From positions 184,580 through 248,579 of the IMG/VR virus record IMGVR_UViG_3300009093_000035: a DNA stretch of 64,000 nt; one strand, 5' to 3'. Shown piece by piece: positions 4,394 through 15,112 of the stretch. Under the pieces are notes generated by a model that made no database searches, was not told the origin of the DNA, and saw only the letters and a list, made by a program, of their open reading frames with translations. The translations under genes and the position numbers were made by a program. Every line of letters begins with the position of its first letter. The first letter of the stretch is position 1.

Positions 4394-6028
4394 TCACAGT
4401 GCCGCAGCCGCCTCCTGAGCGGCGACCGGGGCCGGGGCCTTCTCTTCGAGAGAGACGGCCTCGATCTTCTTCACCCAGTGATCCTTGCCCGAGCCCTTGA
4501 CGAACTCGGTCATGAGGGTGAAGACCTCGTCGGAGAAGCCGCCGACGTTGAGGATGTCCTCACGCGTCGGAGCCTGGCGAGAACCGTTCGGCGCGAGGTC
4601 GATGCAGACCATCTTCGCCTTCGGGTTCCGAGCGCGGAGAGCCTCCCACTCGACCATCGCCGCCGTCGGAGACGACGTGTGGCCAGAGGTGTAGGCGTTG
4701 TGGACGACCTTCGTGTCCATCCACGACTCGTTGTCCGAGGCGTAGGTGACGGCGTCCACCTTCTCCTTGTTGTGGTTGAGCGCCCTCATCGGCGCCGAGC
4801 AGTTCGTCCCGCCCGGCGGGCAAGACGCGATCTGGTTCGCGATCGTCATGATCGAGTCCCGCGGGTTGAACCGAAGGTTGATCACGTTCTCCGTGAACGG
4901 GAGAACGATCGCGTCCGGGTTCCGACGCATGAGCGTCGCAGCGATCAGGGCCGCCACGTCACGGCAGGTGACCTTCGTCGCCATCTCGCGCTTCCCCGTG
5001 ACCGGAGACGCCATCGACCCGGAGACGTCCGGGAAGACTGCGATTCGACCCTCGAAGGCCGGAACGTTCTTCGTCGCGATCTCCATCGCGTCCTGGAGAG
5101 CGTTCTGGACCTCCATCGGGACACCCGAGGTGTTCCGGTAGGCGATCAGGAGCTGGTACGGGAAGACCCGAGCCTTCGCGATCGACTCCTCGTCGCGGAG
5201 CTTCGCAGCGATGATCTTCACCATCGCCTTGTCCTCGAAGACGCCGTGGCGGAGGAACGTGTTGAGGTTCATCCGCACCGTCTGCCACGAGGCCGAACGT
5301 GCCAGCTCGATCCACTGGGCCTTCGTCAGCTTCGTGTTCGTGAGCATCAGGAACGGCACGTCCGGGATCGGACGCGACGGATCCTTCTTCCACGCCTCGA
5401 ACTCACGAAGCAGCGGGTCCGCCTTCTCCAGGTCGAACTTCTTCCCCACGAGCCACGCGTAGGTCTCCTTCCGAGCGTCCGTCGCCGGCTTCGGGTGGAC
5501 CATCTTGATCACGTCCGCGATCGACGGCTTGTCGCCCGTCGCCCGGATCAGCTGAGCATCGGTGCGCGCAGCGAACCACGCCTCGACCATCTTCTTCGGA
5601 GCCGTCCCGAGGGACTTCCGGCCGACCTTCCCGGAGCGGATGATCTGGACGAAGTTCCGGACCATCTTCGGGTTGTCGAGGATCCGCGAGAACGACGCCC
5701 GAAGGGCCGCGATACCTGCCGGTCCCCGAGTCGTGAGGTGAGCCGCGAGGAGCGCCGGAGCGTCCTTCATGAAGGCGGACTTCCGCCCGTAGACGGCCGT
5801 CTTCGCGACGAACTCCGGAGAGACCTCGGCCGCAAGCTTCAGGATCGCGTCCAGCTGCTCCTCGTCCGACGTGTAGAACGTCGACCCGAGACAGCCGGTT
5901 GCGGTGTACTGAGCGAGGGCCTCCTTCGGGCCCGCCTTGTAGGCGAGACCGCCGGCCGCGTTGAACATGTCGGCGATCGGCGCGACGCGACCCGCCGGAG
6001 CGGACTTGAAAAGCTTCTTGTTTGCCAC
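4394..6028 (-). CDS. rsr: Ro60/Rsr TROVE-domain RNA-binding protein with C-terminal vWA domain
   Basis: Likely GTG start at 6028 (MANKKLFKS, preceded by AAGGGG); N.AGG.AY, FVAKTAVYGR, MVRNF, VRMNL, ARVFPYQL, MIDAS DVSGSM, GGTNCS, SDNESW, GGFSD. Confidence 0.92.
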   Translation of the reverse strand: MANKKLFKSAPAGRVAPIADMFNAAGGLAYKAGPKEALAQYTATGCLGSTFYTSDEEQLDAILKLAAEVSPEFVAKTAVYGRKSAFMKDAPALLAAHLTTRGPAGIAALRASFSRILDNPKMVRNFVQIIRSGKVGRKSLGTAPKKMVEAWFAARTDAQLIRATGDKPSIADVIKMVHPKPATDARKETYAWLVGKKFDLEKADPLLREFEAWKKDPSRPIPDVPFLMLTNTKLTKAQWIELARSASWQTVRMNLNTFLRHGVFEDKAMVKIIAAKLRDEESIAKARVFPYQLLIAYRNTSGVPMEVQNALQDAMEIATKNVPAFEGRIAVFPDVSGSMASPVTGKREMATKVTCRDVAALIAATLMRRNPDAIVLPFTENVINLRFNPRDSIMTIANQIASCPPGGTNCSAPMRALNHNKEKVDAVTYASDNESWMDTKVVHNAYTSGHTSSPTAAMVEWEALRARNPKAKMVCIDLAPNGSRQAPTREDILNVGGFSDEVFTLMTEFVKGSGKDHWVKKIEAVSLEEKAPAPVAAQEAAAAL

Positions 6029-6055
6029 GGTAACACCCCTTCGAACAAAGGAGGG

Positions 6056-6085
6056 CTCTGGCAACTGGATAGGAGTTCCTTCAGG
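6056..6085. repeat. Arm 1 of a 30-nt long-range inverted repeat (partner 14426-14455)
   Basis: Reverse complement CCTGAAGGAACTCCTATCCAGTTGCCAGAG matches 14426-14455 at 28/30. Confidence 0.9.
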
Positions 6086-6229
6086 AAGATTGAACGTGAG
6101 GTCGTTGACGACGAACGCTTGCGTAGAGCGTTGTCCGCGGAGGTTCAGGAGGCTGATCAATTCCTCCCGTAGGCAAGCCTACTTAGCACCAACGTAGAGC
6201 GTCGCCGACAACTCGGCCTGACCTCACGA

Positions 6230-6301
6230 AGCGGGTGGTGGGAATCGAACCCACGATCTTCGCGTTGGCAACGCGCTGCTCTACCGCTGAGCTACACCCG
6301 C
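6230..6301 (-). tRNA. tRNA-Gly(GCC)
   Basis: Cloverleaf; loop TTGCCAA. Confidence 0.9.
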
Positions 6302-6367
6302 AAAAGAAACTGAGACCCATAGCGACCCGACGTCCCGCGATTACCTCCTCCCCAAGGAGAAACGACC

Positions 6368-6772
6368 ATGGGACTTGATATGCAGCAGCCGTCCGTTGTT
6401 ACCGTCGATGACACCAGCATCGACGCCCTCTACGATGGGATCCCCGAGGATTGCGTCGTGGGGTACGTTCTGAGGGTAATCGCCGCCTCGGACGCTGGAT
6501 ACGCCCACTGGGAGAAACGATTCCTCGCTCGTCGCGTGGGGGAAAGCGAAGTGATCATCGACGGGATCTGCGACGTCTTCCCGCCCATCCTGAACGCCGG
6601 AGCTTCAGCCTGGGCGGTCGAGGTATGCGTCGACAACGGATACGTCTGTGTAGACGTCCAAGGCTCGGCTGATACCCAGGTCTTCTGGTTGGTCGATCTC
6701 CACGGAGACGAGATCCCCACGGTCTCCAACGACCGCATGAACCTGAGGACCTCTCGGCGACTCGCGAGATAG
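6368..6772 (+). CDS. Hypothetical beta-rich protein, paralog of 36891-37298
   Basis: AAGGAG SD; colinear similarity with the 36891-37298 product. Confidence 0.7.
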   Translation: MGLDMQQPSVVTVDDTSIDALYDGIPEDCVVGYVLRVIAASDAGYAHWEKRFLARRVGESEVIIDGICDVFPPILNAGASAWAVEVCVDNGYVCVDVQGSADTQVFWLVDLHGDEIPTVSNDRMNLRTSRRLAR

Positions 6773-6786
6773 ACCCTCGAAGAATC

Positions 6787-6903
6787 TGTCGAGCGAAGCC
6801 GAGGTCTGGAATCGAACCAGAGGGTAGCTCCGCGGAAGCTGGGGACCACCCCACAACGGAATCGAACCGTCTCCCTGCCAATGTCTCCCGATCTCGCTCG
6901 ACA
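6787..6903 (-). ncRNA. Structured RNA with two T-loop arms in a closed stem
   Basis: 10-bp closing stem TGTCGAGCGA/TCGCTCGACA; ACGG-TTCGATT-CCGT and TCTGG-TTCGATT-CCAGA. Confidence 0.6.
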
Positions 6904-6988
6904 CGGAGAGTTGAGGTCCCGCCCCTCATGCCCTTACGGGCACCCATTGTTTAGCAAACAAGGCTGGTCCTCGACCAGGTAACCCTCC
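6904..6988 (-). tRNA. tRNA-Ser(GCU), non-canonical 8/4 fold
   Basis: 8-bp acceptor GGAGGGTT/AACTCTCC, G73, 6-bp D stem, loop TTGCTAA, long V arm, 4-bp T stem GAGG-GGCGGGA-CCTC. Confidence 0.8.
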
Positions 6989-7023
6989 AAACACGTTACT
7001 AACGGACGCTCACGCGAACCGGA

Positions 7024-7110
7024 CGGAGAGTGAGGGACTCGAACCCCCGAGGGCCTCTCGACCCATGCCGGTGTTCAAAGCCGGTGCCTTAGCCGCTAGG
7101 CTAACCCTCC
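7024..7110 (-). tRNA. tRNA-Ser(UGA)
   Basis: Canonical 7/5 cloverleaf, long V arm, loop TTTGAAC. Confidence 0.9.
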
Positions 7111-7191
7111 AGGAGTCTGAGAAACCCGCGCTAATCGAAGACGCCCTTGCCTCTTCGGAGGCATGCTCGCCAGAGCTAGGTTTCCCAGACA

Positions 7192-7276
7192 CGGAAGCTG
7201 GAGGTCCCGACCCTCAGAGCCTTTCGACTCCCAACCGCTTTCGAGACGGTGCCGATCCCTGATCGGTTCAACTTCC
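7192..7276 (-). tRNA. tRNA-Ser(CGA), non-canonical 8/4 fold
   Basis: Acceptor GGAAGTTG/CAGCTTCC, D stem CCGATC/GATCGG, loop CTCGAAA, T arm GAGG-GTCGGGA-CCTC. Confidence 0.8.
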
Positions 7277-7384
7277 AATTCTACGTTCTGGCCCCGCCAC
7301 GGAGCCTAGACGACCAGGCAAACTGGCGGGTCGATTGGATGGAGACCTTTGCGTCTCGGATCCGTCGCAGGCCAGAACCTAGAG

Positions 7385-7469
7385 CGGAAAGGAAGGGTCC
7401 CGACCCCCAGACCCTTTCGAGTCCCAACCGCTTTCCAAGCGGTGCCGGCCCCTGGCCAGTTCCCTTTCC
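7385..7469 (-). tRNA. tRNA-Ser(GGA), non-canonical 8/4 fold
   Basis: Acceptor GGAAAGGG/TCCTTTCC, D stem CTGGCC/GGCCGG, loop TTGGAAA, T arm GGGG-GTCGGGA-CCCT. Confidence 0.8.
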
Positions 7470-7473
7470 AAAC

Positions 7474-7634
7474 AGCTCGCTCGTCTCAGCGTGTATAGCC
7501 ATCACACTTCATCATCGTCGTCGCTACTCGGATTCGAACCGAGTCTCCTGGGCTCTACCATAGCGTGGCGCCAGCCACTCTCGCTCCGATTCTGATGCAC
7601 GGATTCGAACCGTGAACTCTGAGACTCACGAACC
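7474..7634 (-). ncRNA. Double tRNA-elbow RNA (permuted tRNA module enclosing a second T-arm module)
   Basis: Closing GTCTCAG/CTGAGAC; T arm CACGG-TTCGAAT-CCGTG; CATCA/TGATG; D-like GTGT-GATGGCTAT-ACAC; inner GCTA..CTCGG-TTCGAAT-CCGAG-TAGC. Confidence 0.6.
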
Positions 7635-7651
7635 TTCGGGCTGCAGCCCTA

Positions 7652-7772
7652 CCCGGAACGCGGGATTCGAACCCGCCTGAAGGGAAGGGTTGCTAGACCT
7701 CCCCACCGCCGCCTTTCCCTGTCCTCTAGCGAACAGGTACAGACAGCCGCTCACCATCTGGCGTACTTCCGA
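7652..7772 (-). ncRNA. tRNA-like RNA with elongated anticodon and variable arms
   Basis: CGGAA/TTCCG acceptor, AGATGGT D-loop, GCGGG-TTCGAAT-CCCGC T arm; two long hairpins with complementary loops GCTAGA/TCTAGC. Confidence 0.55.
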
Positions 7773-7844
7773 TCGGGGTGACAGGGATCGAACCTGCGAT
7801 TTCTCGACCCCCAGCCGAGCGCGATACCACTTCGCTACACCCCG
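7773..7844 (-). tRNA. tRNA-Pro(GGG)
   Basis: Cloverleaf; CTCGG-CTGGGGG-TCGAG. Confidence 0.9.
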
Positions 7845-7897
7845 AAGAAACTAGAAGACCGAGGTCCTGGAGCCTTTCAACTCCAGGACCGATCAGG

Positions 7898-8446
7898 TCA
7901 GGACCCCTCTTCGATCGGAGCATTCCAGTACACGTAGGAGGCCCACGCGTCCGGGATGTTCGTCAACGAAAACCGCATGGTGACTACCGGGAGATACGCG
8001 GGCTTCACGGGCTGCTTGCGCAGCTTCATCCCCGCGCGCTCCGGAGTCCGGTCGGCCTTCTTCTCGTTGCACGAGTAGCAGGCCATCACGATGTTCTCCC
8101 AGGTCGTCCTACCGCCGTGAGAGCGGGGGGTGACGTGGTCGTACGTGAGCTTCGAGAGCGGGAGCTTCCCGGTACCCGGAGGGCAGTACTGACAGGTGAA
8201 GTTGTCCCGCGTCGCTACGTTCACCCGAGAGAACTTCACGGCCTGCTTCTTGCCGCGGATCCTCCCGAGGAGACGAACGACGGCCGGCATCTTGAAGGAG
8301 AGGGTCACGTGGATTTCCTCGTTGTACTCCTCCACTACCTCGGCGACGTTGTCGAGGACCATACACACGGCCCTCTGCCAGTCCACGATCCTGTGGGGTA
8401 CCCACCCCTGATCCAATACGAGAGTTGTTTGCACGGCCTTACCCAC
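7898..8446 (-). CDS. HNH endonuclease (McrA-like)
   Basis: RDNFTCQYC, LTYDHVTPRSHGGRTTWENIVMACYSCNEKK; type often found in tRNA arrays. Confidence 0.92.
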   Translation of the reverse strand: MGKAVQTTLVLDQGWVPHRIVDWQRAVCMVLDNVAEVVEEYNEEIHVTLSFKMPAVVRLLGRIRGKKQAVKFSRVNVATRDNFTCQYCPPGTGKLPLSKLTYDHVTPRSHGGRTTWENIVMACYSCNEKKADRTPERAGMKLRKQPVKPAYLPVVTMRFSLTNIPDAWASYVYWNAPIEEGS

Positions 8447-8469
8447 CTTTCCTGAGCTGTTGTTTTGGT

Positions 8470-8552
8470 TGCGAGAGGAGGGAGTCGAACCCTCACGCCC
8501 CGAAGGGCACCGATTTTTGAGACCGGCGCGTCTGCCATTCCGCCACTCTCGC
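8470..8552 (-). tRNA. tRNA-Leu(CAA)
   Basis: Cloverleaf, V arm; loop CTCAAAA. Confidence 0.92.
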
Positions 8553-8578
8553 GTCTACTGAAACTTACTCGAAAGGGA

Positions 8579-8664
8579 TGCCCGGGGGGAGAGTCGAACT
8601 CCCACGACCGCTAGGATCGCCGCCTTCTGAGGACGGTGTGTCTACCAAGTTCCACCACCCGGGC
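8579..8664 (-). tRNA. tRNA-Leu(CAG)
   Basis: Loop CTCAGAA, V arm. Confidence 0.92.
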
Positions 8665-8680
8665 TCAAAAACCTACTCAC

Positions 8681-8762
8681 TGCGGAAGAGGGGACTTGAA
8701 CCCCTACGCCACAAGGACACTGGAACCTAAACCCAGCGCGTCTGCCATTCCGCCACTTCCGC
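8681..8762 (-). tRNA. tRNA-Leu(UAG)
   Basis: Loop TTTAGGT, V arm. Confidence 0.92.
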
Positions 8763-8768
8763 TCTACA

Positions 8769-8851
8769 TGGGGACGGGGGGACTTGAACCCCCACGTCAC
8801 GAAGGACACTAGCACCTCAAGCTAGCGCGTCTGCCTTTCCGCCACGTCCCC
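8769..8851 (-). tRNA. tRNA-Leu(GAG)
   Basis: Loop TTGAGGT, V arm. Confidence 0.92.
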
Positions 8852-8868
8852 ATTACGAATCGAACCAG

Positions 8869-8954
8869 TGCTCGGGGGGAGAGTCGAACTCCCATGACCG
8901 CGAAGGATCGTTGGATTCTTAGTCCAGTGTGTCTGCCAGTTCCACCACCCGAGC
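8869..8954 (-). tRNA. tRNA-Leu(AAG)
   Basis: Loop CTAAGAA, Leu-type D and V arms. Confidence 0.85.
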
Positions 8955-9030
8955 GTACGAACCGAAGATTGTCCAAGATCGAGAGGGGCCCTCCGAGGAA
9001 TCCCTCGGGGGCTGATCCTCCCGTCCGGTA

Positions 9031-9102
9031 TGCGCGAAGAGGGGATTGAACCCCCGACCGTCGCCGTGTAAAGGCGCTGCTCTTCCGCTGAGCTATCCGC
9101 GC
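9031..9102 (-). tRNA. tRNA-Val(UAC)
   Basis: Loop TTTACAC. Confidence 0.9.
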
Positions 9103-9107
9103 GTTGA

Positions 9108-9199
9108 TGGACCTACCTGGACTCGAACCAGGTCAATCGCCGCTCGACCACCCCAGGTTTTCCTTGCTGTGAGGCGATTACGTCACTGAGGTTAGGCCC
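9108..9199 (-). ncRNA. Mini-tmRNA-like RNA (tRNA-like domain only)
   Basis: Acceptor GGGCCTA/TAGGTCC with G3.U70 and A73, stemless D region, helix AATCGCC/GGCGATT, GA then CCTGG-TTCGAGT-CCAGG. Confidence 0.6.
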
Positions 9200-9302
9200 A
9201 TCGAATTGGTTCTCCATGCGCGCTATTCGGAGGAGAAGCCCGAAATGTACGGCGACCGGACTACGTGGCCCACACCACCCGTTATGTCGCTGCGCTTTGG
9301 TC

Positions 9303-9375
9303 TGCACGACCGGAGGATCGAACTCCGCTAGAACGGCTTGTGATACCGTCGCCCTCTCCAGATGGCTCGCCGTGC
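9303..9375 (-). tRNA. tRNA-Val(CAC), atypical D arm
   Basis: GACGGT-ATCACAA-GCCGTT; acceptor GCACGGC/GTCGTGC. Confidence 0.75.
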
Positions 9376-9521
9376 GTCAGGCTCGTCTCGACCCGCGGCC
9401 CCCGAGAGGGCGGAACCCCATCAGGACCATCACTACCGCCACCGGGGGCCAGAGGATGGACTCGACTGCGAGACGAACACGTACTTTGAAGGGCATCCCC
9501 TACCCTACTCGAAGAAACCAA

Positions 9522-9593
9522 TCGGGGTGACAGGGATCGAACCTGCGATCTCACCGTCCCGAACGGTGCGCGATACCACTTCGCTACACCCCG
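9522..9593 (-). tRNA. tRNA-Pro(CGG)
   Basis: CACCG-TTCGGGA-CGGTG. Confidence 0.92.
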
Positions 9594-9769
9594 ATAAATC
9601 GTACTTCGGCGGGTCTCTCACCCCGCATCCTTCCAGGTCCGGATTCCCGTCCGTCTACGCGGCCTTGTACCGCTCCCTCGCTGCTTGTCGTCAGCGGCCC
9701 TGTACGATCGTTCACGAGAAGGGTTCGCCCCGACGCTGCAGACGCCGAGACTACTTTTCCGACTCGCTA

Positions 9770-9838
9770 TCCCTCCCGACGGAATCGAACCGCCTCGTAC
9801 GCCCGTATGAAAGGCATCGCCTCGCCAGAAAGAGAGGG
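9770..9838 (-). tRNA. tRNA(CAU) (Met or Ile2) lacking a D stem
   Basis: Acceptor CCCTCTC/GGGAGGG, loop TTCATAC, T arm GGCGG-TTCGATT-CCGTC. Confidence 0.6.
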
Positions 9839-9845
9839 GTGGACA

Positions 9846-9918
9846 CGTCTCCAGTAGGATTCGAACCTACAATGGACCCTTCGGAGGGGTCAGTGATATC
9901 CAGTTTCACCATGGAGAC
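9846..9918 (-). tRNA. tRNA-Arg(CCG)
   Basis: GACCC-CTCCGAA-GGGTC. Confidence 0.88.
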
Positions 9919-9941
9919 ATTGGCCTTCTACCAAACCAGAG

Positions 9942-10013
9942 CGTCTTCGGAAGGATTCGAACCTTCAATAAGCGGTTCGTAGCCGCTCGTGATATCCATT
10001 TCACCACGAAGAC
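9942..10013 (-). tRNA. tRNA-Arg(ACG)
   Basis: AGCGG-CTACGAA-CCGCT. Confidence 0.9.
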
Positions 10014-10031
10014 ATGAGTCAGAAACAGGAG

Positions 10032-10103
10032 CGTCCACGGAGGGAGTTGAACCCACGACCTGTCGCTTCGTAGGCGACCGCTCTTCCTCTGAGCTACGCG
10101 GAC
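10032..10103 (-). tRNA. tRNA-Arg(ACG)
   Basis: GTCGC-CTACGAA-GCGAC. Confidence 0.9.
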
Positions 10104-10115
10104 ATGAACCGAGAG

Positions 10116-10187
10116 CGTCCCCGGAGGGATTCGAACCCCCGACCGACCGCTTAGAAGGCGATCGCTCTTCCTCTGAGCTACGAGGAC
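10116..10187 (-). tRNA. tRNA-Arg(UCU)
   Basis: Loop CTTCTAA. Confidence 0.9.
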
Positions 10188-10214
10188 ATTGGCTTGCACG
10201 GAAACCCCTACGAA

Positions 10215-10286
10215 AGGTGCGGGTGAGAATCGAACTCACCTCAACCAGGGTTGCAATCTGATGCCCTCAGCCAGAGGGACCGCACC
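10215..10286 (-). tRNA. tRNA-Cys(GCA)
   Basis: Loop TTGCAAC, U73. Confidence 0.8.
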
Positions 10287-10299
10287 AAAGAGAACTAGA

Positions 10300-10363
10300 G
10301 GCCGACAAGTAGCGCCGAGAGGGGGTTACCGTGCAAAGGTGTACTCCCGGCAAGTATTCGGCC
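10300..10363 (-). ncRNA. Y RNA-like #1 (minimal)
   Basis: 5' GGCCGAAU..GGAGUACA / 3' CUUGUCGGCC stem shared with five other copies. Confidence 0.7.
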
Positions 10364-10365
10364 AG

Positions 10366-10437
10366 AGCGGGTGGCGGGGATCGAACCCGCGACGTCCTGG
10401 ATGGGAACCAAGCGCTCTACCGCTGAGCCACACCCGC
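10366..10437 (-). tRNA. tRNA-Gly(CCC)
   Basis: Loop TTCCCAT. Confidence 0.9.
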
Positions 10438-10523
10438 TTGTATTAGATCGAAGTTACGGAAGTTACCAGACCTTATCGAACCTCATGGTAACTCTCGGCT
10501 ACATGGACGGAACCAGAAACCAG

Positions 10524-10594
10524 AGCGGGCAGCGAGAATCGAACTCGCGTCTTCGGCTTGGAAGGCCGAGGCCAAGCCACTTGACCATGCCCGC
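10524..10594 (-). tRNA. tRNA-Gly(UCC)
   Basis: TCGGC-CTTCCAA-GCCGA. Confidence 0.88.
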
Positions 10595-10606
10595 ATACGA
10601 ACCGGA

Positions 10607-11012
10607 TGGACTCGTCCGGAATTGAACCGGAGTCCACGAAGTCTACTACGATCGAGTACCACGCGCGTCTTCAACTCTTACGCCTGTCTTTCTAACGAGG
10701 AAGGCGCGAGGCTTGACAACCTCTCTTTCGGAACTCCCCGCGAAGTCTGCTCGGTTCCCCGCCTCGACTTCGATCGTCCCTCAGATCGCCTTTCGGCTCC
10801 CGCTGAGGTACAGCCGGGATTCCCCTAGCTCGATTACGCCAACGAGGAGAGTGCTAGGGACTCTCCTCGCCGACGGATCAGGCCGCCTGAGCGAGCTGAT
10901 CGTAGCTGCTGTCGTTCGCAGTTACTGTTGGTTGGCTTGATAACCCGGCCTGCCTACCACCCGGAGCGCGCACTCTCTCGTTTCGAACCCCATGTCGAAA
11001 CCTGTCGAGCCC
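10607..11012 (-). ncRNA. ssrA: tmRNA; tag ANDSSYDQLAQAA* at 10878-10919
   Basis: 5' GGGCTCGACAGGTTTCGAC, 3' GGACTCCGGTTCAATTCCGGACGAGTCCA, G3.U70, resume context TAACT-GCG AAC GAC. Confidence 0.95.
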
Positions 11013-11028
11013 GAAGACACTAGACCAG

Positions 11029-11101
11029 AGCCATCGGCGGGAGTTGAACCCGCGACCTCTCGCATACCAAGCGAGCGCTCTTCCAACTGAGCTACGAAGG
11101 C
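11029..11101 (-). tRNA. tRNA-Thr(GGU)
   Basis: Loop TTGGTAT. Confidence 0.9.
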
Positions 11102-11106
11102 AAAAG

Positions 11107-11179
11107 AGCCGGCAGGGGCGCTCGAATCCCCCATCTCCCGCTTACGAAACGGGCGCATCGCCATCTATGCTTTACCGGC
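11107..11179 (-). tRNA. tRNA-Thr(CGU)
   Basis: Loop TTCGTAA. Confidence 0.8.
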
Positions 11180-11276
11180 AAGTTCCCAAGGTGTCCCGAG
11201 AGGACCACTCTCGTTCTTCCGAGGGCGCTTGGACGTTTTTCAAGGGTTGCTGGTTAGGCTCCTCTCACCGTCCTAG

Positions 11277-11348
11277 TGGATCCTACAGGGATTGAACCTG
11301 CGGCCTCTCGGGTGCAAACCGAGCGCTCTCCCGCTGAGCTAAGGACCC
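11277..11348 (-). tRNA. tRNA-Ala(UGC)
   Basis: Loop TTTGCAC, G3.U70. Confidence 0.92.
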
Positions 11349-11352
11349 AAAG

Positions 11353-11420
11353 TGGACCGAGCGGATTCGAACCGCTTCCTTCCGTGTTCCACGGACGCTC
11401 TTCCTTTTGAGCTACGATCC
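11353..11420 (-). pseudogene. tRNA-like element with collapsed anticodon loop
   Basis: Normal D and T arms, but anticodon arm TCCGTG-GAA-CACGGA and 6-bp acceptor. Confidence 0.6.
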
Positions 11421-11478
11421 TCTGTCTCGCCCCGGAAGCGAAACAGTTCGTCAATCGTCCGCGCGAACGACCAACTAG

Positions 11479-11551
11479 TGGACAAGAGGGGGATCGAACC
11501 CCTGACCTACGCCATGCCATGGCGTCGCTCTCCCAGCTGAGCTACTCGCCC
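11479..11551 (-). tRNA. tRNA-Ala(GGC)
   Basis: Loop ATGGCAT, G3.U70. Confidence 0.92.
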
Positions 11552-11820
11552 AAAACGACCCTCGGTAATACAGGCCGCCAACGAAGGAACAAGGCTACTC
11601 TCGTCCGACTCCCGAAGGAATCGTTCTCGTACGTGTCTCCGACCCGGGGCTCCTAGAAGCGCGGAACCGGAACCGACGCGAGATGATCCTCACCGACAAG
11701 GATCGACAGGTACTGCACGGTCTGCTTGCGCCTACCGTTTCCCTCCTTGAGTTTGGAGCCGGACCCGCCTAGGGTTTCTCGCCACCACAGCGTCCTAGGT
11801 CGGGTTGGTGTCCGGCGTGA

Positions 11821-11890
11821 TCGCGGCCCCAAGAGTTGAACTTGGCATCCCTGGGTTATGAGCCCTGGGCAGCGTCCCCGCTGCACCGCA
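11821..11890 (-). tRNA. Atypical initiator-like tRNA(CAU) with miniature D arm
   Basis: GGG-CTCATAA-CCC; D arm CAGCG-GGGA-CGCTG. Confidence 0.6.
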
Positions 11891-11897
11891 TCTACAA

Positions 11898-11971
11898 GAG
11901 CGCGAGAAGGATTTGAACCTCCGACCTACGGGTTATGAGCCCGTCGAGCTGCCAGACTGCTCCACCGCGCA
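11898..11971 (-). tRNA. tRNA-fMet(CAU)
   Basis: Three G-C pairs in the anticodon stem, 1-72 mismatch. Confidence 0.85.
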
Positions 11972-12043
11972 TCGTCCAGGTGGGGATCGAACCCACGACC
12001 TTCCGCGTGTCGAGCGGATGCTCTTCCTCTGAGCCACTGGACG
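11972..12043 (-). tRNA. tRNA-Val(GAC)
   Basis: TCCGC-TCGACAC-GCGGA. Confidence 0.88.
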
Positions 12044-12061
12044 GTCTCGATCTAAGAACCA

Positions 12062-12134
12062 TGGAGCAGATGGGATTCGAACCCAACGCACCTCGTGTAT
12101 CAGACGAAGTAGTGCGACCAGCAACTTCCGCTCC
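12062..12134 (-). tRNA. tRNA-Ile(GAU)
   Basis: Loop CTGATAC. Confidence 0.75.
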
Positions 12135-12154
12135 GTTTTCGAGCCAGACACTAG

Positions 12155-12228
12155 GGTGATCGGGGGGAGTTGAACCCACCGTACCTCGGGTCACAGCCGA
12201 GTGCCTTAACCGTTAGGCTACGACCACC
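12155..12228 (-). tRNA. tRNA-His(GUG) with encoded G-1
   Basis: CTCGG-CTGTGAC-CCGAG; G-1:C73. Confidence 0.9.
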
Positions 12229-12239
12229 ATGAAGAGATT

Positions 12240-12371
12240 CGGGTGACAAGAGCGGAGAAGACGTTTTTTGGACTGCCGCTCTACCATCTGAGCTACCACC
12301 CCCTTTCGGAGACGGGCGGGACTCGAACCCGCGACCCGCAGTGTTGTTGTAGTCCTATTCCAATTCACCCG
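12240..12371 (-). ncRNA. Y RNA-like #2 (YrlA-type, permuted tRNA module)
   Basis: CGGGUGAAU..GACUACA / CUUGUCACCCG; T arm GCGGG-TTCGAGT-CCCGC, GAAA-capped acceptor, then D arm TAGCTCAGATGGTAGAGC. Confidence 0.85.
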
Positions 12372-12372
12372 A

Positions 12373-12445
12373 CGTTCCCGGGAGGACTCGAACCTCCGAC
12401 CTGCCGTTTAGGAAACGGCCCCTCTATCCACTGAGGTACGGGAAC
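12373..12445 (-). tRNA. tRNA-Arg(CCU)
   Basis: GCCGT-TTCCTAA-ACGGC. Confidence 0.9.
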
Positions 12446-12449
12446 ACGA

Positions 12450-12588
12450 TTGCGAGAGAGGGACTTGAACCCCCACGAGCGCTTCCGTTACTTCCCTGGG
12501 AAGCGCTTCCCGTACGGGTTTCACGGATGGGCCTAGGACCCTGTCTCTCCGAGTCGCCTCGGCGCGTCTGCCATTTCGCCATCTCGCA
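12450..12588 (-). ncRNA. Anticodon-less oversized tRNA-Leu mimic A
   Basis: Acceptor TGCGAGA/TCTCGCA, Leu D arm GGCGAAATGGCAGACGC, anticodon arm capped by GCGA, three hairpins in the variable region, normal T arm. Confidence 0.7.
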
Positions 12589-12596
12589 TCGAACAC

Positions 12597-12748
12597 TAGG
12601 GAGAAGGGGAATCGAACCCCCACCGGGCTCTACAGGACTCTCCGCGGTTCGCGACCCTCGGATCCTCCCGTTGGCTCGGGGTGCGCACCCCTTACCGTCC
12701 CTGCCGGAACTTTCATCCCGGTGCGTCTACCAGTTCCGCCATCTCCCG
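12597..12748 (-). ncRNA. Anticodon-less oversized tRNA-Leu mimic B
   Basis: Leu D arm GGCGGAACTGGTAGACGC, CCGGGAT-GAAA-GTTCCGG, ~80-nt structured variable region, normal T arm. Confidence 0.7.
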
Positions 12749-12770
12749 TCAACGAACGGAAGGAAAAGTT

Positions 12771-12903
12771 TGGGCGACAAGTGTTGGCGAAGATCTTTTC
12801 GTCGCTCTACCAACTGAGCTACCGCCCCGTGAAAGTGGGGCGGGCTGGACTCGAACCAGCGGCCTCCGGCTTGAAATGCTGTAATCCTCTCCGAATTCAC
12901 CCA
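12771..12903 (-). ncRNA. Y RNA-like #3 (YrlA-type)
   Basis: UGGGUGAAU..GAUUACA / CUUGUCGCCCA; GCTGG-TTCGAGT-CCAGC, closed acceptor CCGCCCC/GGGGCGG, D arm TAGCTCAGTTGGTAGAGC. Confidence 0.85.
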
Positions 12904-12904
12904 A

Positions 12905-12977
12905 CGTTCCCGGAGGGGATCGAACCCCCGACCTGCGGTTTCGAAGACCGCCGCTCTTCCGGCTGAGCTACGAGAAC
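12905..12977 (-). tRNA. tRNA-Arg(UCG)
   Basis: GCGGT-CTTCGAA-ACCGC. Confidence 0.9.
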
Positions 12978-13019
12978 CCTCGATTTATGGCTTCGAGGTA
13001 CCTTTGCGCGCGAAGGAAG

Positions 13020-13094
13020 CGTCCCGTGGGGGATTTGAACCCGCCGTCGCCAGATTGAGAGTCTAGCATCCTAGGCCAACTAGAAGAACGGGAC
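13020..13094 (-). tRNA. tRNA-Glu(CUC)
   Basis: Loop CTCTCAA. Confidence 0.88.
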
Positions 13095-13099
13095 ATAGA

Positions 13100-13175
13100 G
13101 GCGAGACAAGAGAGACCGAGACGAGGGGCTTTCGCCCCACATTACCCAAAATGTAGTCCCGATCGAATTCTCACC
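13100..13175 (-). ncRNA. Y RNA-like #4 (minimal)
   Basis: GGUGAGAAU..GACUACA / CUUGUCUCGCC; GGGGC-GAAA-GCCCC hairpin. Confidence 0.72.
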
Positions 13176-13176
13176 A

Positions 13177-13249
13177 TGGACAGGAGGGGGATTGAACCCC
13201 TGACCTCTGCATTGCGAACGCAGCGCTCTCCCAGCTGAGCTACCCGCCC
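13177..13249 (-). tRNA. tRNA-Ala(CGC)
   Basis: Loop TTCGCAA, G3.U70. Confidence 0.92.
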
Positions 13250-13390
13250 AAACGAAAACCAGGTTCTCGAATCGGACTCGGGTAGGTCGATTCCCTTTCG
13301 GGAGGTGGCCTACCCTATCCCTAGCTCCTCGGGCCTGGCGCTACCGAGAAGATCCGAGCCAGCGAGGACCGAGGTCCCCGCGAAGATAGC

Positions 13391-13514
13391 CGTGCGACAA
13401 GAGTGACAGCGACGTTTTCTAGGCCCGAGCCTCGCTCCCTTTCGGGAACGACCAGGATTCGAACCTGGCTCGATTGTTGTTCATACAATGTAGTCCCCAT
13501 CGAGTATTCGCACG
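13391..13514 (-). ncRNA. Y RNA-like #5 (T arm plus GAAA-closed acceptor, degenerate D arm)
   Basis: CGUGCGAAU..GACUACA / CUUGUCGCACG; CCAGG-TTCGAAT-CCTGG; TCGTTCCC-GAAA-GGGAGCGA. Confidence 0.8.
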
Positions 13515-13516
13515 AG

Positions 13517-13589
13517 TCGGGATGACCGGATTCGAACCGACGTCTCCTGCGCCCAAGGCAGGTGCTAAACCAGGCTCAGCTACATCCCG
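13517..13589 (-). tRNA. tRNA-Pro(UGG)
   Basis: CCTGC-CTTGGGC-GCAGG. Confidence 0.9.
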
Positions 13590-13600
13590 AACAGAAACCA

Positions 13601-13676
13601 TGCAGCGAACTGGAGTTGAACCAGTGCCTCCCGGGTTTCAACCGAGCGCTCTACCTATGGGCTGAGCTATCGCTGC
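13601..13676 (-). tRNA. tRNA-Phe(GAA)
   Basis: Loop TTGAAAC. Confidence 0.85.
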
Positions 13677-13679
13677 GTA

Positions 13680-13752
13680 TGCTACGGGTCGGAATTGAAC
13701 CGACGACACCCCGCTCTTCAGGCGAGTGCTCTACCAACTGAGCTACCGTAGC
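13680..13752 (-). tRNA. tRNA-Phe(GAA)
   Basis: Loop CTGAAGA. Confidence 0.9.
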
Positions 13753-13758
13753 AAGACA

Positions 13759-13832
13759 CGCCCCCGAAGAGAATCGAACTCTCCTCGACCCTGCTTGACA
13801 AGCAGGCGTCTTCACCAGAGGACTACGAGGGC
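13759..13832 (-). tRNA. tRNA-Asp(GUC)
   Basis: CCTGC-TTGTCAA-GCAGG. Confidence 0.88.
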
Positions 13833-13850
13833 AGGAACCAGGAAATTTAA

Positions 13851-13939
13851 GGCGACAAAGATCCCGAAGACACAGAGCGAGCCTTTCGGCCCTCTCTTCT
13901 GGTTTTGGTAGAAGAATGTAGTCTTCAGAGCATTCGCCC
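13851..13939 (-). ncRNA. Y RNA-like #6 (minimal)
   Basis: GGGCGAAU..GACUACA / UUUGUCGCC; GAAA-capped hairpin. Confidence 0.7.
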
Positions 13940-13940
13940 A

Positions 13941-14008
13941 CGGGCTGTTAGGGACTCGAACCCAGCGCGGTCGGTTTTGGAGGCCAACCTGTGCCCTGCA
14001 CCCAGCCC
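13941..14008 (-). tRNA. tRNA-Trp(CCA) with miniature D arm
   Basis: Loop CTCCAAA; D arm GTGC-AGG-GCAC. Confidence 0.7.
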
Positions 14009-14157
14009 AATAGCTGAGACCGTCCGGCCTACGGGCCCGCACGATCTCGTACCTCCTCCTACACATGGCAGGTGAGATCTAAGAATAGCGACCGGCGCTC
14101 GCCCCGAGTGCTCGTCCTCCCTACCGGAGGCTGCGTTCTCGAAGTGCTTTCGGTCTA

Positions 14158-14229
14158 CTCCTGGGGCAGGAGTCGAACCTGCGGTAGGCGAGTTAACAGC
14201 TCGCTGCCTTACCACTTGGCTACCCAGGA
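14158..14229 (-). tRNA. tRNA-Asn(GUU)
   Basis: GCGAG-CTGTTAA-CTCGC. Confidence 0.92.
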
Positions 14230-14269
14230 AGGATCTCAACGGACCCCATCGGAAGAAACGAAGGAGGAA

Positions 14270-14341
14270 CTCCGGCAGTAGGGGTCGAACCTACGACATC
14301 CTGGTTAACAGCCAGGCGCTCTTCCACTGAGCTATACCGGA
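14270..14341 (-). tRNA. tRNA-Asn(GUU)
   Basis: CCTGG-CTGTTAA-CCAGG. Confidence 0.92.
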
Positions 14342-14425
14342 ATGTGAGGGAGGCCCTCCCGTACCCGAGCCCTTGCGAGGCGATTCGAGTACGAGAGTCC
14401 CCTCTCCGCGCCCTTGGGGAGGGCG

Positions 14426-14455
14426 CCTGAAGGAACTCCTATTCAGTTGTCAGAG
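14426..14455. repeat. Arm 2 of the long-range inverted repeat; boxA-like on the minus strand
   Basis: Minus strand CTCTGACAACTGAATAGGAGTTCCTTCAGG. Confidence 0.85.
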
Positions 14456-14516
14456 ACCTCGGAACACAGAGAGCCGTAGTTCACTACGTACTCCAGCCAC
14501 AGGGTGGCTTTTTCAA

Positions 14517-14587
14517 TTCCCAGTCGAGGATTCGAACCTCAGTTGTCCGAGTCAGATTCGGAAGTCCTGCCGCTAGACGAACCGGGA
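14517..14587 (-). tRNA. tRNA-Gln(CUG)
   Basis: TCCGA-ATCTGAC-TCGGA. Confidence 0.88.
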
Positions 14588-14659
14588 TGGGACACCGGGG
14601 ACTCAAACCCCGTTCTTCCGATTAAGAGTCGGATGCTTCATCACTAAAGCTTGTGTCCC
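14588..14659 (-). tRNA. tRNA-Lys(CUU)
   Basis: TCCGA-CTCTTAA-TCGGA. Confidence 0.85.
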
Positions 14660-14677
14660 GAACTGGAACCGAGGAAC

Positions 14678-14749
14678 TGGGACCGGTGGGGATCGAACCC
14701 ACGACCGTCGGGTTAAAAGCCCGCTGTTCTACCGCTGAACTACGGTCCC
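14678..14749 (-). tRNA. tRNA-Lys(UUU)
   Basis: Loop CTTTTAA. Confidence 0.9.
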
Positions 14750-14796
14750 GAGAGGGGAACCGCAGGGTTTGAGGTTGACGTACATCTTTCGAACCA

Positions 14797-14879
14797 TGGA
14801 GACGCCAGGAATCGAACCTGATTTCCTCCGAAGAGGGGCGGGGTTACAGTCCGCCTACGAGGCCACTCGTATCATCTCC
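14797..14879 (-). tRNA. tRNA-Tyr(GUA)
   Basis: Loop CTGTAAC, V arm. Confidence 0.8.
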
Positions 14880-14890
14880 AAAAGGAACCA

Positions 14891-14974
14891 TGGAGTGTGA
14901 GGGATTCGAACCCTCAATGTCCGAAGACTCCTGATTTACAGTCAGGTGGGGCTACCAATGCCCACGTACACTCC
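14891..14974 (-). tRNA. tRNA-Tyr(GUA)
   Basis: CCTGA-CTGTAAA-TCAGG, V arm. Confidence 0.82.
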
Positions 14975-15041
14975 GCGAGAGAAACCGAGCCGAACCGAAG
15001 TCGAGGAACCGAACGAGAGGACCGAGGGAAACCAGGACCCT

Positions 15042-15082
15042 AAAACGACTTCAGGCCGCCCGGGTTTCCCTGGGCGGCCTGA
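15042..15082 (-). terminator. Intrinsic terminator / attenuator hairpin upstream of the RNA operon
   Basis: TCAGGCCGCCCAGGG-AAA-CCCGGGCGGCCTGA followed by AGTCGTTTT. Confidence 0.65.
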
Positions 15083-15112
15083 CATCATCCCTTTGGGGGG
15101 TAGAGAGTCAGG

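What the first reader, a model, noticed from the sequence alone, without database searches (positions are those of the whole stretch)
6056..14455. rRNA-operon-like long-range stalk enclosing ~8.3 kb of RNA genes and ending just upstream of the Ro60 start
Seen: 6056-6085 and 14426-14455 are 28/30 inverted repeats; on the minus transcript they would form a 30-bp helix with two A.C mismatches. The 5' arm reads CTCTGACAACTGAATAG, resembling the boxA-adjacent CTTTGA(A/C)AACTGAATA of rrn leaders and spacers. The 3' arm ends ~27 nt before the TROVE GTG. Established: rrn operons use boxA antitermination and RNase III stalks. Inference: the phage treats its tRNA/Y-RNA block like an rRNA operon, with cleavage releasing the block and the Ro60 mRNA.
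Basis: partly seen in the sequence, partly recalled or inferred. Interest (0 to 1): 0.75.

Follow-up and report, generated by a model that had tools for sequence, protein, structure and literature searches.

The report
Phage tRNA operon mimics rRNA stalk
A giant soil phage carries, inside its long tRNA gene array, a copy of the bacterial ribosomal-RNA "boxA" signal that is kept complementary to a stretch 4-11 kb downstream, right in front of its Ro60 gene. The phage therefore appears to borrow the rRNA-operon antitermination and long-range-helix design to run a non-coding RNA operon and to express a protein gene embedded in it.

Summary
Window 6051-6085 and 14426-14460 form a unique 28/30 (32/35 extended) inverted repeat. 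Both arms lie on the gene strand of a tRNA/tmRNA array.

**The pair is conserved.** Seven related phages carry it 4.1-10.9 kb apart, with compensatory substitutions and a paired 1-bp indel. Cognate arms pair better than swapped arms (4 of 5040 permutations do as well).

**The two arms evolve differently.**
- The 5' arm core (CTCTGACAACTGAATAGGA) is invariant and matches the boxA consensus 10/12.
- The same core occurs verbatim in a bacterial 16S-23S spacer at the canonical boxA position.
- The 3' arm drifts, and it resembles that operon's 16S trailer.

**The 3' arm travels with Ro60.** A complete relative lacking Ro60 keeps boxA but lacks exactly the "3' arm + Ro60" cassette.

- The helix does not enclose the whole array: 4-5 tRNAs lie upstream of the 5' arm, and more lie after Ro60.
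- The helix tracks Ro60, not tRNA processing.

**Not shown.** RNase III cleavage, NusB/S10 binding and co-transcription of the arms are inferred. No DNA inversion was seen.

**Verdict.** This is an rrn-like boxA plus leader-trailer-type helix, a new variant of a known kind.

The parts
14426..14460 (-). 5' (upstream) arm of the long-range helix. It contains the invariant 19-mer CTCTGACAACTGAATAGGA (14455 down to 14437) and the boxA-like core GGUCUCUGACAAC (14458 down to 14446).
   Evidence: The 19-mer is identical in 6 related phages and in a bacterial rrn spacer.
6051..6085 (-). 3' (downstream) arm, an 'anti-boxA'. It ends 22-27 nt before the Ro60 start codon.
   Evidence: Homologous arms lie directly upstream of Ro60 in G001, G002, G004, L038, L039, L052 and L053.
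4394..6028 (-). Ro60/TROVE gene. GTG start at 6028, RBS GAAGGGG at 6042-6036, stop at 4394-4396.
   Evidence: Pfam vWA_Ro60 and TROVE. It is 70-78% identical to the relatives' Ro60.
6086..14425 (-). The enclosed 8340-nt block. It holds about 37 tRNA genes, a tmRNA (10607-11012), two sub-threshold YrlA-like hits (12768-12903, 12252-12371) and an HNH endonuclease ORF (7901-8446). All are on the minus strand.
14343..14425 (-). Conserved structured part of the tRNA-Gln to tRNA-Asn spacer, downstream of the 5' arm. It consists of a small GC hairpin followed by a long hairpin (GGGACUC...GAGGGCC).
   Evidence: The whole 174-nt spacer 14343-14516, which also contains the 5' arm, folds at -79 kcal/mol with z -3.35. 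RNAalifold finds 14 of 30 pairs with both-sided changes.
14495..14509 (-). Small hairpin (GCCACC..GUGGC) just upstream of boxA, at the position boxB occupies in rrn leaders. It is present in some relatives only (L028, L053, G002).
14517..14974 (-). tRNA-Tyr, a tRNA-like element, tRNA-Lys, tRNA-Lys and tRNA-Gln. These lie upstream of the 5' arm and therefore outside the helix.
   Evidence: The same order is seen in relatives.
6230..6301 (-). tRNA-Gly(gcc), the last tRNA before the 3' arm in all relatives.
6086..6229 (-). 144-nt structured element between tRNA-Gly and the 3' arm, closed by a 9-bp stem. It has no Rfam family. A similar sequence lies upstream of tRNA-Gly in G004.

Best explanation
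**What it is.** The tRNA/tmRNA array of this jumbo soil phage is built like an rRNA operon.

- After the first four or five tRNAs the transcript carries an rrn-type boxA. BoxA is the RNA site that loads NusB-S10 and the other Nus factors onto RNA polymerase. The likely purpose is to let the polymerase cross 4-11 kb of untranslated RNA genes without Rho-dependent termination.
- BoxA and the 15-25 nt around it also form the 5' strand of a 25-45-bp long-range RNA helix. The 3' strand lies immediately upstream of the ribosome-binding site of Ro60, a protein gene embedded in the array.
- The helix is the counterpart of the rrn leader-trailer helix.

**How it most likely works (inferred).**
1. The boxA-bearing strand stays tethered to the elongating polymerase through NusB-S10, as proposed for rrn.
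2. It pairs with the anti-boxA strand when that strand emerges.
3. The resulting duplex is cut by host RNase III. This separates the Ro60 mRNA from the tRNA precursor and leaves a short leader.
4. Because the helix engulfs boxA itself, pairing probably also strips NusB-S10. That would end the antiterminated mode at the point where translation begins.

**Shown here:** the repeat, its conservation, the co-evolution of the arms, the identity to an rrn boxA site, and the linkage of the 3' arm to Ro60.

**Inferred:** a single transcript, Nus binding, RNase III cleavage, and the effect on Ro60 expression.
For: **The repeat is real and unique.** It occurs once per arm in the 248.6-kb record and in none of 100 shuffles.

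**All genes between and around the arms are on the same strand**. Terminator-like sites are no more frequent than in shuffles.

**The same arm pair is found in relatives.** It always lies after tRNA-Gln(ctg) and just before Ro60:
- G001, 10.9 kb apart.
- G002, 7.9 kb, and G004, 5.9 kb.
- L038, 4.3 kb, and L039, 4.1 kb.
- L053, about 6.8 kb, with a shorter helix.

**Duplex strength.** Duplex energies for six of these pairs (L053, the shortest helix, gives -36.6) are -48 to -72 kcal/mol, against -28 to -39 for the next-best sites.

**Compensatory changes.**
- UUCAGG/CCUGAA versus UUCGAG/CUCGAA.
- GGAGUUCC/GGAACUCC versus GGACUUC/GGAGUCC versus GGAAGCCAUUC/GAAUGGCUUCC.
- A paired 1-bp deletion in G001.
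- Non-homologous flanks that still pair.

**Cognate arms pair better than swapped arms.** The means are -51.5 versus -42.3 kcal/mol. Only 4 of 5040 permutations do as well.

**Conservation is asymmetric.** The 5' 19-mer is invariant in 6 of 7 phages. The 3' arm carries 2-4 substitutions or an indel. This fits a 5' arm with an additional sequence-specific role.

**BoxA identity.**
- The 19-mer lies at L049 607-625, between tRNA-Ala (480-552) and 23S (from 772) of a bacterial rrn fragment.
- GCUCUCUGACAA matches E. coli UGCUCUUUAACA at 10/12 positions (consensus from PMC13753749).
- L049's 16S trailer (TCCGGTTCAGTTTTCAGGGAC) resembles the phage 3' arms. It pairs with the phage 5' arm at -43.4 kcal/mol.
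- The same boxA stands alone in other tRNA arrays, L036 and L047.

**Ro60 linkage.** In the complete genome G003, tRNA-Gly(gcc) is followed after 13 nt by tRNA-Thr(cgt). In the Ro60-bearing phages the 3' arm and Ro60 sit between these two tRNAs. G003 has no partner for its boxA anywhere in its 198 kb.

**The tethering model for rrn leader-trailer pairing is published** (PMC10250234).
Against: - No transcript evidence exists. No RNA run holding Ro60 was listed. The only RNA contig is a 183-nt piece from a ~94% relative covering 14269-14449, and it could be DNA carry-over.
- In the window itself the two internal mismatches are A.C on the sense strand, and the antisense duplex is more stable (-65.0 versus -55.2 kcal/mol).
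- Across all phages the sense strand has about 8-9 G.U events against 4-5 A.C events. This is only a weak strand bias.
- tRNA processing by RNase P and other enzymes should sever the chain between the arms long before the 3' arm is made. Cis pairing therefore depends on the unproven tethering step.
- In E. coli, boxA lies outside the leader-trailer helix, whereas here it lies inside. Pairing and Nus binding would therefore compete.
- The rrn link rests on one metagenomic rrn fragment from an unidentified bacterium. The exact 19-mer was not found in any rrn operon of 185,579 species genomes.
- The host is unknown.
Confidence: 0.55

Rival explanations
1. Trans-acting spacer RNA. The 112-174-nt tRNA-Gln to tRNA-Asn spacer is released by ordinary tRNA processing as a stable, structured small RNA. 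It then base-pairs in trans with the Ro60 5' UTR and controls its translation or stability, with or without RNase III. BoxA-like sequence and antitermination would be incidental or a separate function.
For: - The spacer is flanked by tRNAs, so it would be excised by RNase P and 3' processing.
- It folds strongly (-79 kcal/mol, z -3.35) and has conserved hairpins with covariation.
- Arm co-evolution and the Ro60 linkage are explained equally well by trans pairing.
- The distance between arms varies 4-11 kb, which has no obvious cost for a trans mechanism.
Against: - It does not explain why the paired core is invariant and identical to an rrn boxA-site sequence.
- It does not explain why the same motif is kept in G003, L036 and L047 without any target.
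- In the local fold half of the arm is sequestered.
Confidence: 0.2
2. BoxA only. The 5' arm functions solely as an antitermination site for the untranslated array. The complementary sequence before Ro60 is a leftover of how the Ro60 cassette was acquired, for example by recombination with rrn-like leader/trailer DNA, and has no present function.
For: - BoxA stands alone in G003 and in other arrays.
- The 3' arm resembles a bacterial 16S trailer.
- The 3' arm accumulates substitutions.
Against: - An unselected 30-nt relic should have decayed in phages whose intergenic flanks are unalignable.
- Instead the variable parts and the flanks of the arms change together.
- Cognate pairs are the best pairs (4 of 5040 permutations).
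Confidence: 0.1
3. DNA-level element. The inverted repeats are sites for a recombinase or DNA-binding protein, such as invertible-segment sites, transposon ends or a shared operator.
For: - Inverted orientation around a discrete segment.
- Concerted change of both copies could come from gene conversion.
- In the window the mismatches favour the antisense strand.
- An HNH endonuclease ORF lies inside the segment.
Against: - Seven of seven phages have the segment in the same orientation relative to Ro60.
- The source sample's 80-kb contig is collinear across the arm, and no strand-changing joints were reported. Contigs can miss rare isomers.
- No recombinase family was found in the ORFs tested in or next to the segment.
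- The two copies are not conserved alike: the 5' copy is invariant and the 3' copy is variable.
- One copy exists alone in G003 and in an rrn spacer.
Confidence: 0.05

Closest known systems
Bacterial rrn operon leader-trailer helix with boxA/boxC and the rrn antitermination complex (E. coli; PMC10250234)
   Same: - A boxA-type sequence lies early in a long untranslated multi-gene RNA operon.
- A 25-45-bp helix forms between sequences kilobases apart on the same strand, and it is supported by covariation.
- The 5' strand carries a nearly invariant motif, while the 3' strand varies and compensates.
- Spacer tRNAs are adjacent.
- The phage arms resemble the boxA site and the 16S trailer of a real rrn fragment.
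   Different: - The helix encloses tRNAs, a tmRNA and Y-like RNAs (4-11 kb) rather than one rRNA.
- BoxA itself lies inside the helix. In E. coli boxC, 18-19 nt downstream of boxA, is the paired motif.
- The 3' strand abuts a protein-gene RBS and is gained or lost together with that gene.
- The element is carried by a phage.
BoxA-dependent Nus antitermination outside rrn (suhB leader, CRISPR arrays; cited in PMC13753749)
   Same: BoxA is placed at the head of a long untranslated array, presumably to block Rho.
   Different: Those cases have no long-range complementary partner. This one is in a phage tRNA array, and no report of that was found in the library searched.
Phage lambda nutL / N-leader RNase III site (from general knowledge, not checked here)
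   Same: A phage boxA-containing antitermination site lies close to an RNase III-cleaved structure that affects translation of the adjacent gene.
   Different: - Lambda uses boxA+boxB with the phage N protein and a local structure.
- Here there is no N-like system in evidence.
- The helix spans kilobases, and the motif is the host rrn type.
Bacterial rsr (Ro60)-Y RNA loci (PMC4201824)
   Same: Ro60 is encoded next to non-coding RNAs with tRNA-like modules. YrlA-like hits lie inside the enclosed block.
   Different: Known loci are not described as embedded in a tRNA operon or as preceded by an anti-boxA strand.

Membership tests
rrn-type boxA (NusB-S10 loading site) | Sequence matches the boxA consensus | tested here: met
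   GCUCUCUGACAA in relatives (GGUCUCUGACAA in the window) matches E. coli UGCUCUUUAACA at 10/12. The B. subtilis consensus AUGAUCUUUGAAA is also similar (consensi from PMC13753749; sequences).
rrn-type boxA (NusB-S10 loading site) | The same sequence occupies a boxA position in a real rrn operon | tested here: met
   L049 contains 16S 3' end, tRNA-Ile, tRNA-Ala, the exact 19-mer at 607-625, and 23S from 772. This is a single fragment from an unidentified organism.
rrn-type boxA (NusB-S10 loading site) | Lies on the sense strand of a long untranslated transcription unit and is accessible | tested here: met
   It lies between co-directional tRNA genes. In the local MFE fold of the spacer, GACAACUGAAUA is unpaired.
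rrn-type boxA (NusB-S10 loading site) | Binds NusB-S10 and confers read-through of Rho-dependent terminators | not testable with these tools
   The complex-prediction job was not folded for protein-RNA complexes. The host is unknown.
rrn leader-trailer helix / RNase III processing stalk | At least 20-25 bp of complementarity between distant sequences on the gene strand | tested here: met
   The helix has 32 pairs in the window and 35-43 in relatives, at -48 to -72 kcal/mol.
rrn leader-trailer helix / RNase III processing stalk | Pairing maintained by covariation | tested here: met
   At least 6 helix columns show both-sided changes among 4 arm types, and there is a paired indel. Cognate arms beat swapped arms, with 4 of 5040 permutations as good. 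Caveat: some of the phages are close kin.
rrn leader-trailer helix / RNase III processing stalk | Both strands lie on one primary transcript | tested here: inconclusive
   The arms are on the same strand and there is no excess of terminator-like sites. No RNA data were available.
rrn leader-trailer helix / RNase III processing stalk | Cleaved by RNase III | not testable with these tools
   No end-mapping data exist. No phage RNase III was found in the held record.
rrn leader-trailer helix / RNase III processing stalk | Encloses an rRNA | tested here: not met
   It encloses tRNAs, a tmRNA, YrlA-like RNAs and an HNH ORF. It therefore works like an rrn stalk but is not one.
Invertible DNA segment / recombination sites | Both orientations occur, a recombinase is nearby, and the two sites are conserved alike | tested here: not met
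   One orientation is seen in 7/7 phages and in the source contig. No recombinase domain was found in the ORFs tested. The 5' site is invariant and the 3' site variable. Rare isomers cannot be excluded from contigs.

The most novel reading that the evidence does not exclude
The pair is a programmed mode switch for RNA polymerase.

1. The boxA RNA is loaded with NusB-S10 and rides on the polymerase through kilobases of RNA genes.
2. It is then captured by an anti-boxA strand placed exactly in front of the one protein gene in the operon.
3. In one step this dissolves the antitermination complex, frees NusG for ribosome coupling, and creates the RNase III-cut 5' end of the Ro60 mRNA.

This would be a cis-encoded 'off' signal for Nus-factor antitermination, something not described for rrn or for lambda.
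Probability: 0.2. Interest if true: 0.85.

Novelty: new variant of a known kind. Interest (0 to 1): 0.68.

Why it matters
**Generality.** If confirmed, the rrn antitermination and leader-trailer design would not be confined to ribosomal RNA. It would be a portable module that viruses copy to express long non-coding RNA operons.

**A natural test system.** Helices are kept complementary over 4-11 kb of RNA that is being chopped up as it is made. That makes this a natural test of the idea that boxA-NusB tethering brings distant RNA strands together.

**Expression of an embedded protein gene.** The tight linkage of the anti-boxA strand to Ro60 suggests how a protein gene can be expressed from inside an antiterminated, untranslated operon.

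**A handle on phage Ro60.** It links phage Ro60, whose role is obscure, to an rRNA-style processing context.

**Host prediction.** BoxA sequences in phage arrays may help predict hosts, because they should match the host rrn boxA.

Tried and rejected
- **Known phages.** Megablast of the Ro60 region against 50,697 phage records found nothing. The distal region hit only a tRNA-Asn. The closest known Ro60 is in Myxococcus phage Mx1, at 43%.
- **Species genomes.** An exact 19-mer scan of 185,579 species genomes gave one hit, inside a coding region, consistent with chance. A search with up to 3 mismatches in 401 Pseudomonadota genomes was at the level of the reversed-pattern control. None of the 12 fetched loci was next to rRNA. 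The host group remains unknown.
- **Relatives search.** 'Relatives' cannot be drawn for a virus record, and metagenome records cannot be searched by handle.
- **RNA evidence.** No RNA run was listed for Ro60. Only assembler contigs could be laid, which give no ends and no direction.
- **Protein-RNA modelling.** Complex prediction with NusB, S10 and the 5' arm RNA was not folded. It is not evidence either way.
- **Phage-encoded factors.** No RNase III or NusB was found in the held record, which is about 56% complete.
- **RBS occlusion.** A local hairpin occludes the RBS in the window. It is not conserved in relatives, so it was given no weight.
- **Plus-strand terminator.** The terminator-like hairpin at 14495-14509 was first considered as the end of an antisense small RNA driven by the motif acting as a promoter. 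This was rejected: no promoter consensus is present, the hairpin is absent in most relatives, and the motif is an rrn boxA.
- **Cyanophage hit.** The motif also matches cyanophage S-CBS2. This suggested a cyanobacterial host, but the source is rhizosphere or soil.
- **More distant Ro60 phages.** L055-L058 (41-47% Ro60 identity) have neither boxA nor the helix.

Full report
**1.

The plus strand at 6056-6085 and the reverse complement of 14426-14455 differ at two positions out of 30. Gap-free extension gives 35-nt arms, 6051-6085 and 14426-14460, at 91% complementarity with 8340 nt between them. No shuffle of the window produced a match. These are the only copies in the 248,579-bp IMG/VR viral record in which the window lies.

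All annotated RNA genes here are on the minus strand:
- 45 of the window's 46 tRNA genes; the one other tRNA, near 39.8 kb, is also on the minus strand.
- A tmRNA at 10607-11012.
- Two sub-threshold YrlA-like hits.

The Ro60 gene (Pfam vWA_Ro60 and TROVE) is also on the minus strand and starts at the GTG at 6028. The 30-nt arm ends 27 nt before the start codon.

One correction applies. The upstream arm is not at the edge of the array. It lies between tRNA-Gln(ctg) and tRNA-Asn, with Tyr, a tRNA-like element, Lys, Lys and Gln upstream of it. More tRNAs follow Ro60.

**2. The pair is conserved in related phages**

Ro60-based and motif-based searches of IMG/VR and JGI metagenomes recovered a family of large phages with the same array order: Tyr-Lys-Lys-Gln-[spacer]-Asn ... 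Gly(gcc)-Ro60-Thr-Thr-Glu.

In every member that encodes Ro60, the sequence just after tRNA-Gln(ctg) is complementary to the sequence just before the Ro60 ribosome-binding site.

| Phage | Distance between arms |
|---|---|
| G001 | 10.9 kb |
| Window | 8.3 kb |
| G002 | 7.9 kb |
| L053 | about 6.8 kb (shorter, ~18-bp helix) |
| G004 | 5.9 kb |
| L038 | 4.3 kb |
| L039 | 4.1 kb |

L052 holds a matching 3' arm, but the contig ends before the 5' arm. Duplex energies for six of these pairs (all but L053) are -48 to -72 kcal/mol with 32-43 pairs; L053, the shortest helix, gives -36.6. The next-best site for the same 5' arm in each locus scores -28 to -39.

**3. The arms co-evolve, and they do so asymmetrically**

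Outside an invariant core, the arms differ between phages but change together:
- UUCAGG/CCUGAA in the window, UUCGAG/CUCGAA in G004.
- GGAGUUCC/GGAACUCC in the window, GGACUUC/GGAGUCC in G004, GGAAGCCAUUC/GAAUGGCUUCC in G002.
- A G-C pair deleted from both arms in G001, L038 and L039.
- Upstream flanks that are not alignable between phages but still pair with their own partners.

In a swap test, cognate 5'/3' arm pairs average -51.5 kcal/mol and non-cognate pairs -42.3. Only 4 of 5040 permutations of partners do as well. Several of the phages are close kin, so this overstates independence. With five distinct arm types the figure is 2 of 120.

The conservation is lopsided. The 19-mer CTCTGACAACTGAATAGGA is identical in six of seven 5' arms. 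The corresponding part of the 3' arms carries 2-4 substitutions or an indel. That is what one expects if the 5' arm has a sequence-specific job and the 3' arm only has to pair. It is not what one expects of two equivalent DNA sites.

Strand evidence is weak:
- Summed over the phages, the sense strand has about 17 G.U cells (8-9 events) against 5 A.C cells (4-5 events).
- The sense duplex is the more stable one in four of the six phages compared, about equal in one, and less stable in the window itself.

**4. The 5' arm is an rrn-type boxA**

One of the exact 19-mer hits in metagenomes, L049, is a bacterial rrn fragment. It contains the 16S 3' end (1-148), tRNA-Ile (329-402), tRNA-Ala (480-552), the motif at 607-625 and 23S from 772. 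That is the canonical position of the spacer boxA.

The core GCUCUCUGACAA matches the E. coli boxA consensus UGCUCUUUAACA at 10 of 12 positions. It is also close to the Bacillus consensus AUGAUCUUUGAAA (both quoted in PMC13753749).

About 75-95 nt after the 16S 3' end, the same fragment carries TCCGGTTCAGTTTTCAGGGAC. This sequence resembles the phage 3' arms and pairs with the phage 5' arm at -43.4 kcal/mol. In other words, it looks like the trailer strand of a 16S leader-trailer helix whose leader strand contains boxA.

The same motif also stands alone in other settings:
- In other tRNA arrays (L036, L047).
- In front of terminator hairpins in unrelated contigs, including cyanophage S-CBS2.

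**5. The 3' arm belongs to Ro60, not to the array**

G003 is a complete 198-kb relative with terminal repeats. It has the array and the boxA spacer but no Ro60.

In G003, tRNA-Gly(gcc) is followed after 13 nt by tRNA-Thr(cgt). In the Ro60-bearing phages the 3' arm and Ro60 sit exactly between these two tRNAs. A duplex scan of the whole G003 genome found no continuous partner for its boxA arm.

The anti-boxA strand is therefore gained and lost together with Ro60, and the tRNA array works without it. More distant Ro60 phages (41-47% identity) have neither element.

**6. DNA-level readings are unlikely**

- All seven phages have the enclosed segment in the same orientation.
- The source sample's 80-kb contig runs collinearly through the upstream arm, and no strand-changing joints were reported. 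Contigs can hide rare isomers.
- The ORFs tested in and beside the segment have no recombinase domain. The only match is an HNH endonuclease.
- The unequal conservation of the two copies, and the existence of single copies, argue against paired protein-binding or recombination sites.

**7. Local structure**

The 174-nt Gln-to-Asn spacer folds strongly (-79 kcal/mol, z -3.35). The fold leaves GACAACUGAAUA unpaired, and the distal half of the arm sits in a local helix. Downstream hairpins are conserved with covariation. Some relatives have a small hairpin just upstream of boxA, as in rrn leaders.

**8. Mechanism**

*Shown:*
- The repeat itself.
- Its conservation.
- The co-evolution of the arms.
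- The rrn boxA identity.
- The Ro60 linkage.

*Inferred, from the established rrn model in PMC10250234 and the references it summarises:*
1. BoxA loads NusB-S10 and the Nus factors. The polymerase can then cross the untranslated array.
2. The boxA-bearing strand stays at the RNA exit channel and pairs with the anti-boxA strand when that strand emerges.
3. The long duplex is an RNase III substrate. Cutting it separates a short-leadered Ro60 mRNA from the tRNA precursor.
4. Because boxA lies inside the helix, pairing may also end antitermination.

A trans-acting version is the main rival and cannot be separated by sequence alone. In that version the excised spacer RNA acts as a small RNA on the Ro60 leader.

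**9. Comparison with known systems and novelty**

The element works like an rrn leader-trailer helix with boxA, but it is not one:
- It encloses tRNAs rather than an rRNA.
- It includes boxA in the helix.
- It abuts a protein gene.
- It is viral.

BoxA outside rrn is known for suhB and CRISPR arrays (PMC13753749). No report of boxA or a leader-trailer-type helix in a phage tRNA array was found in the library searched. It is therefore rated a new variant of a known kind.

**10. Limits**

- There are no RNA ends, no host, and only one rrn fragment.
- The phages are partly related to each other.
- Several tools gave nothing.

Noticed in passing
window 6086-6229 (-); L018 1200-1370: A 144-nt structured element lies between tRNA-Gly(gcc) and the 3' arm. 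It is closed by a 9-bp stem (-53.6 kcal/mol, z -2.2) and has no Rfam family. A similar sequence lies upstream of tRNA-Gly in G004. It is a candidate Y-RNA-like partner of the adjacent Ro60.
   Followed up: partly
window 12768-12903 and 12252-12371 (-): YrlA (Y RNA-like) matches at 51.3 and 39.9 bits, below the gathering score of 69. Both lie inside the enclosed block.
   Followed up: no
window 6915-6990, 7203-7278, 7396-7471: Three copies of a 76-nt direct repeat (61-82% identity) containing GGTCCCGACCC. They may be further small structured RNAs between tRNA-Ser and tRNA-Pro.
   Followed up: no
window 7901-8446 (-): An HNH endonuclease ORF (Pfam HNH, HNH_5) is embedded in the tRNA array.
   Followed up: no
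window ~14975-15330 (-); alignment A3: The region upstream of tRNA-Tyr is conserved among relatives. It contains a possible short ORF (ATGTCTTCCAAAACC...) and a strong GC hairpin (GGCCRCCC...GGGYGGCC), followed by a run of T only in G001. It ends about 100-130 nt before tRNA-Tyr. Three GTTCGGTTC-like repeats lie at 14987-15014. The array promoter should lie here.
   Followed up: partly
L011/L051 (Synechococcus phage S-CBS2, record 32926-32944); L010, L029, L032; L031, L033: The identical 19-mer occurs in unrelated phage or metagenome contigs directly in front of an intrinsic-terminator-like hairpin. In S-CBS2 it lies between gp041 and an endonuclease VII gene. This may be a boxA placed before a terminator.
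   Followed up: partly
L036 643-661; L047 7724-7742 (-): Other tRNA arrays of unknown origin carry TGTTCTCTGACAACTGAATAGGAA after their first tRNAs and have no complementary partner. BoxA in tRNA arrays may be widespread.
   Followed up: partly
L053 8033-8109: A lower-GC relative encodes a putative suppressor tRNA (anticodon tta, reading a stop codon) within the Leu tRNA cluster.
   Followed up: no
L020 (G002:38952-40544): The Ro60 homolog of G002 contains one in-frame TGA.
   Followed up: no
window 14540-14552 (-) and tRNA D-arms in relatives: The boxA core and its complement resemble tRNA segments. Examples are ACTCGGACAACTG in tRNA-Gln, and TCAGTTGGGAGAGC D-arms that give spurious duplexes of about -37 kcal/mol. 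This is probably coincidental, but it inflates background duplex scores.
   Followed up: no
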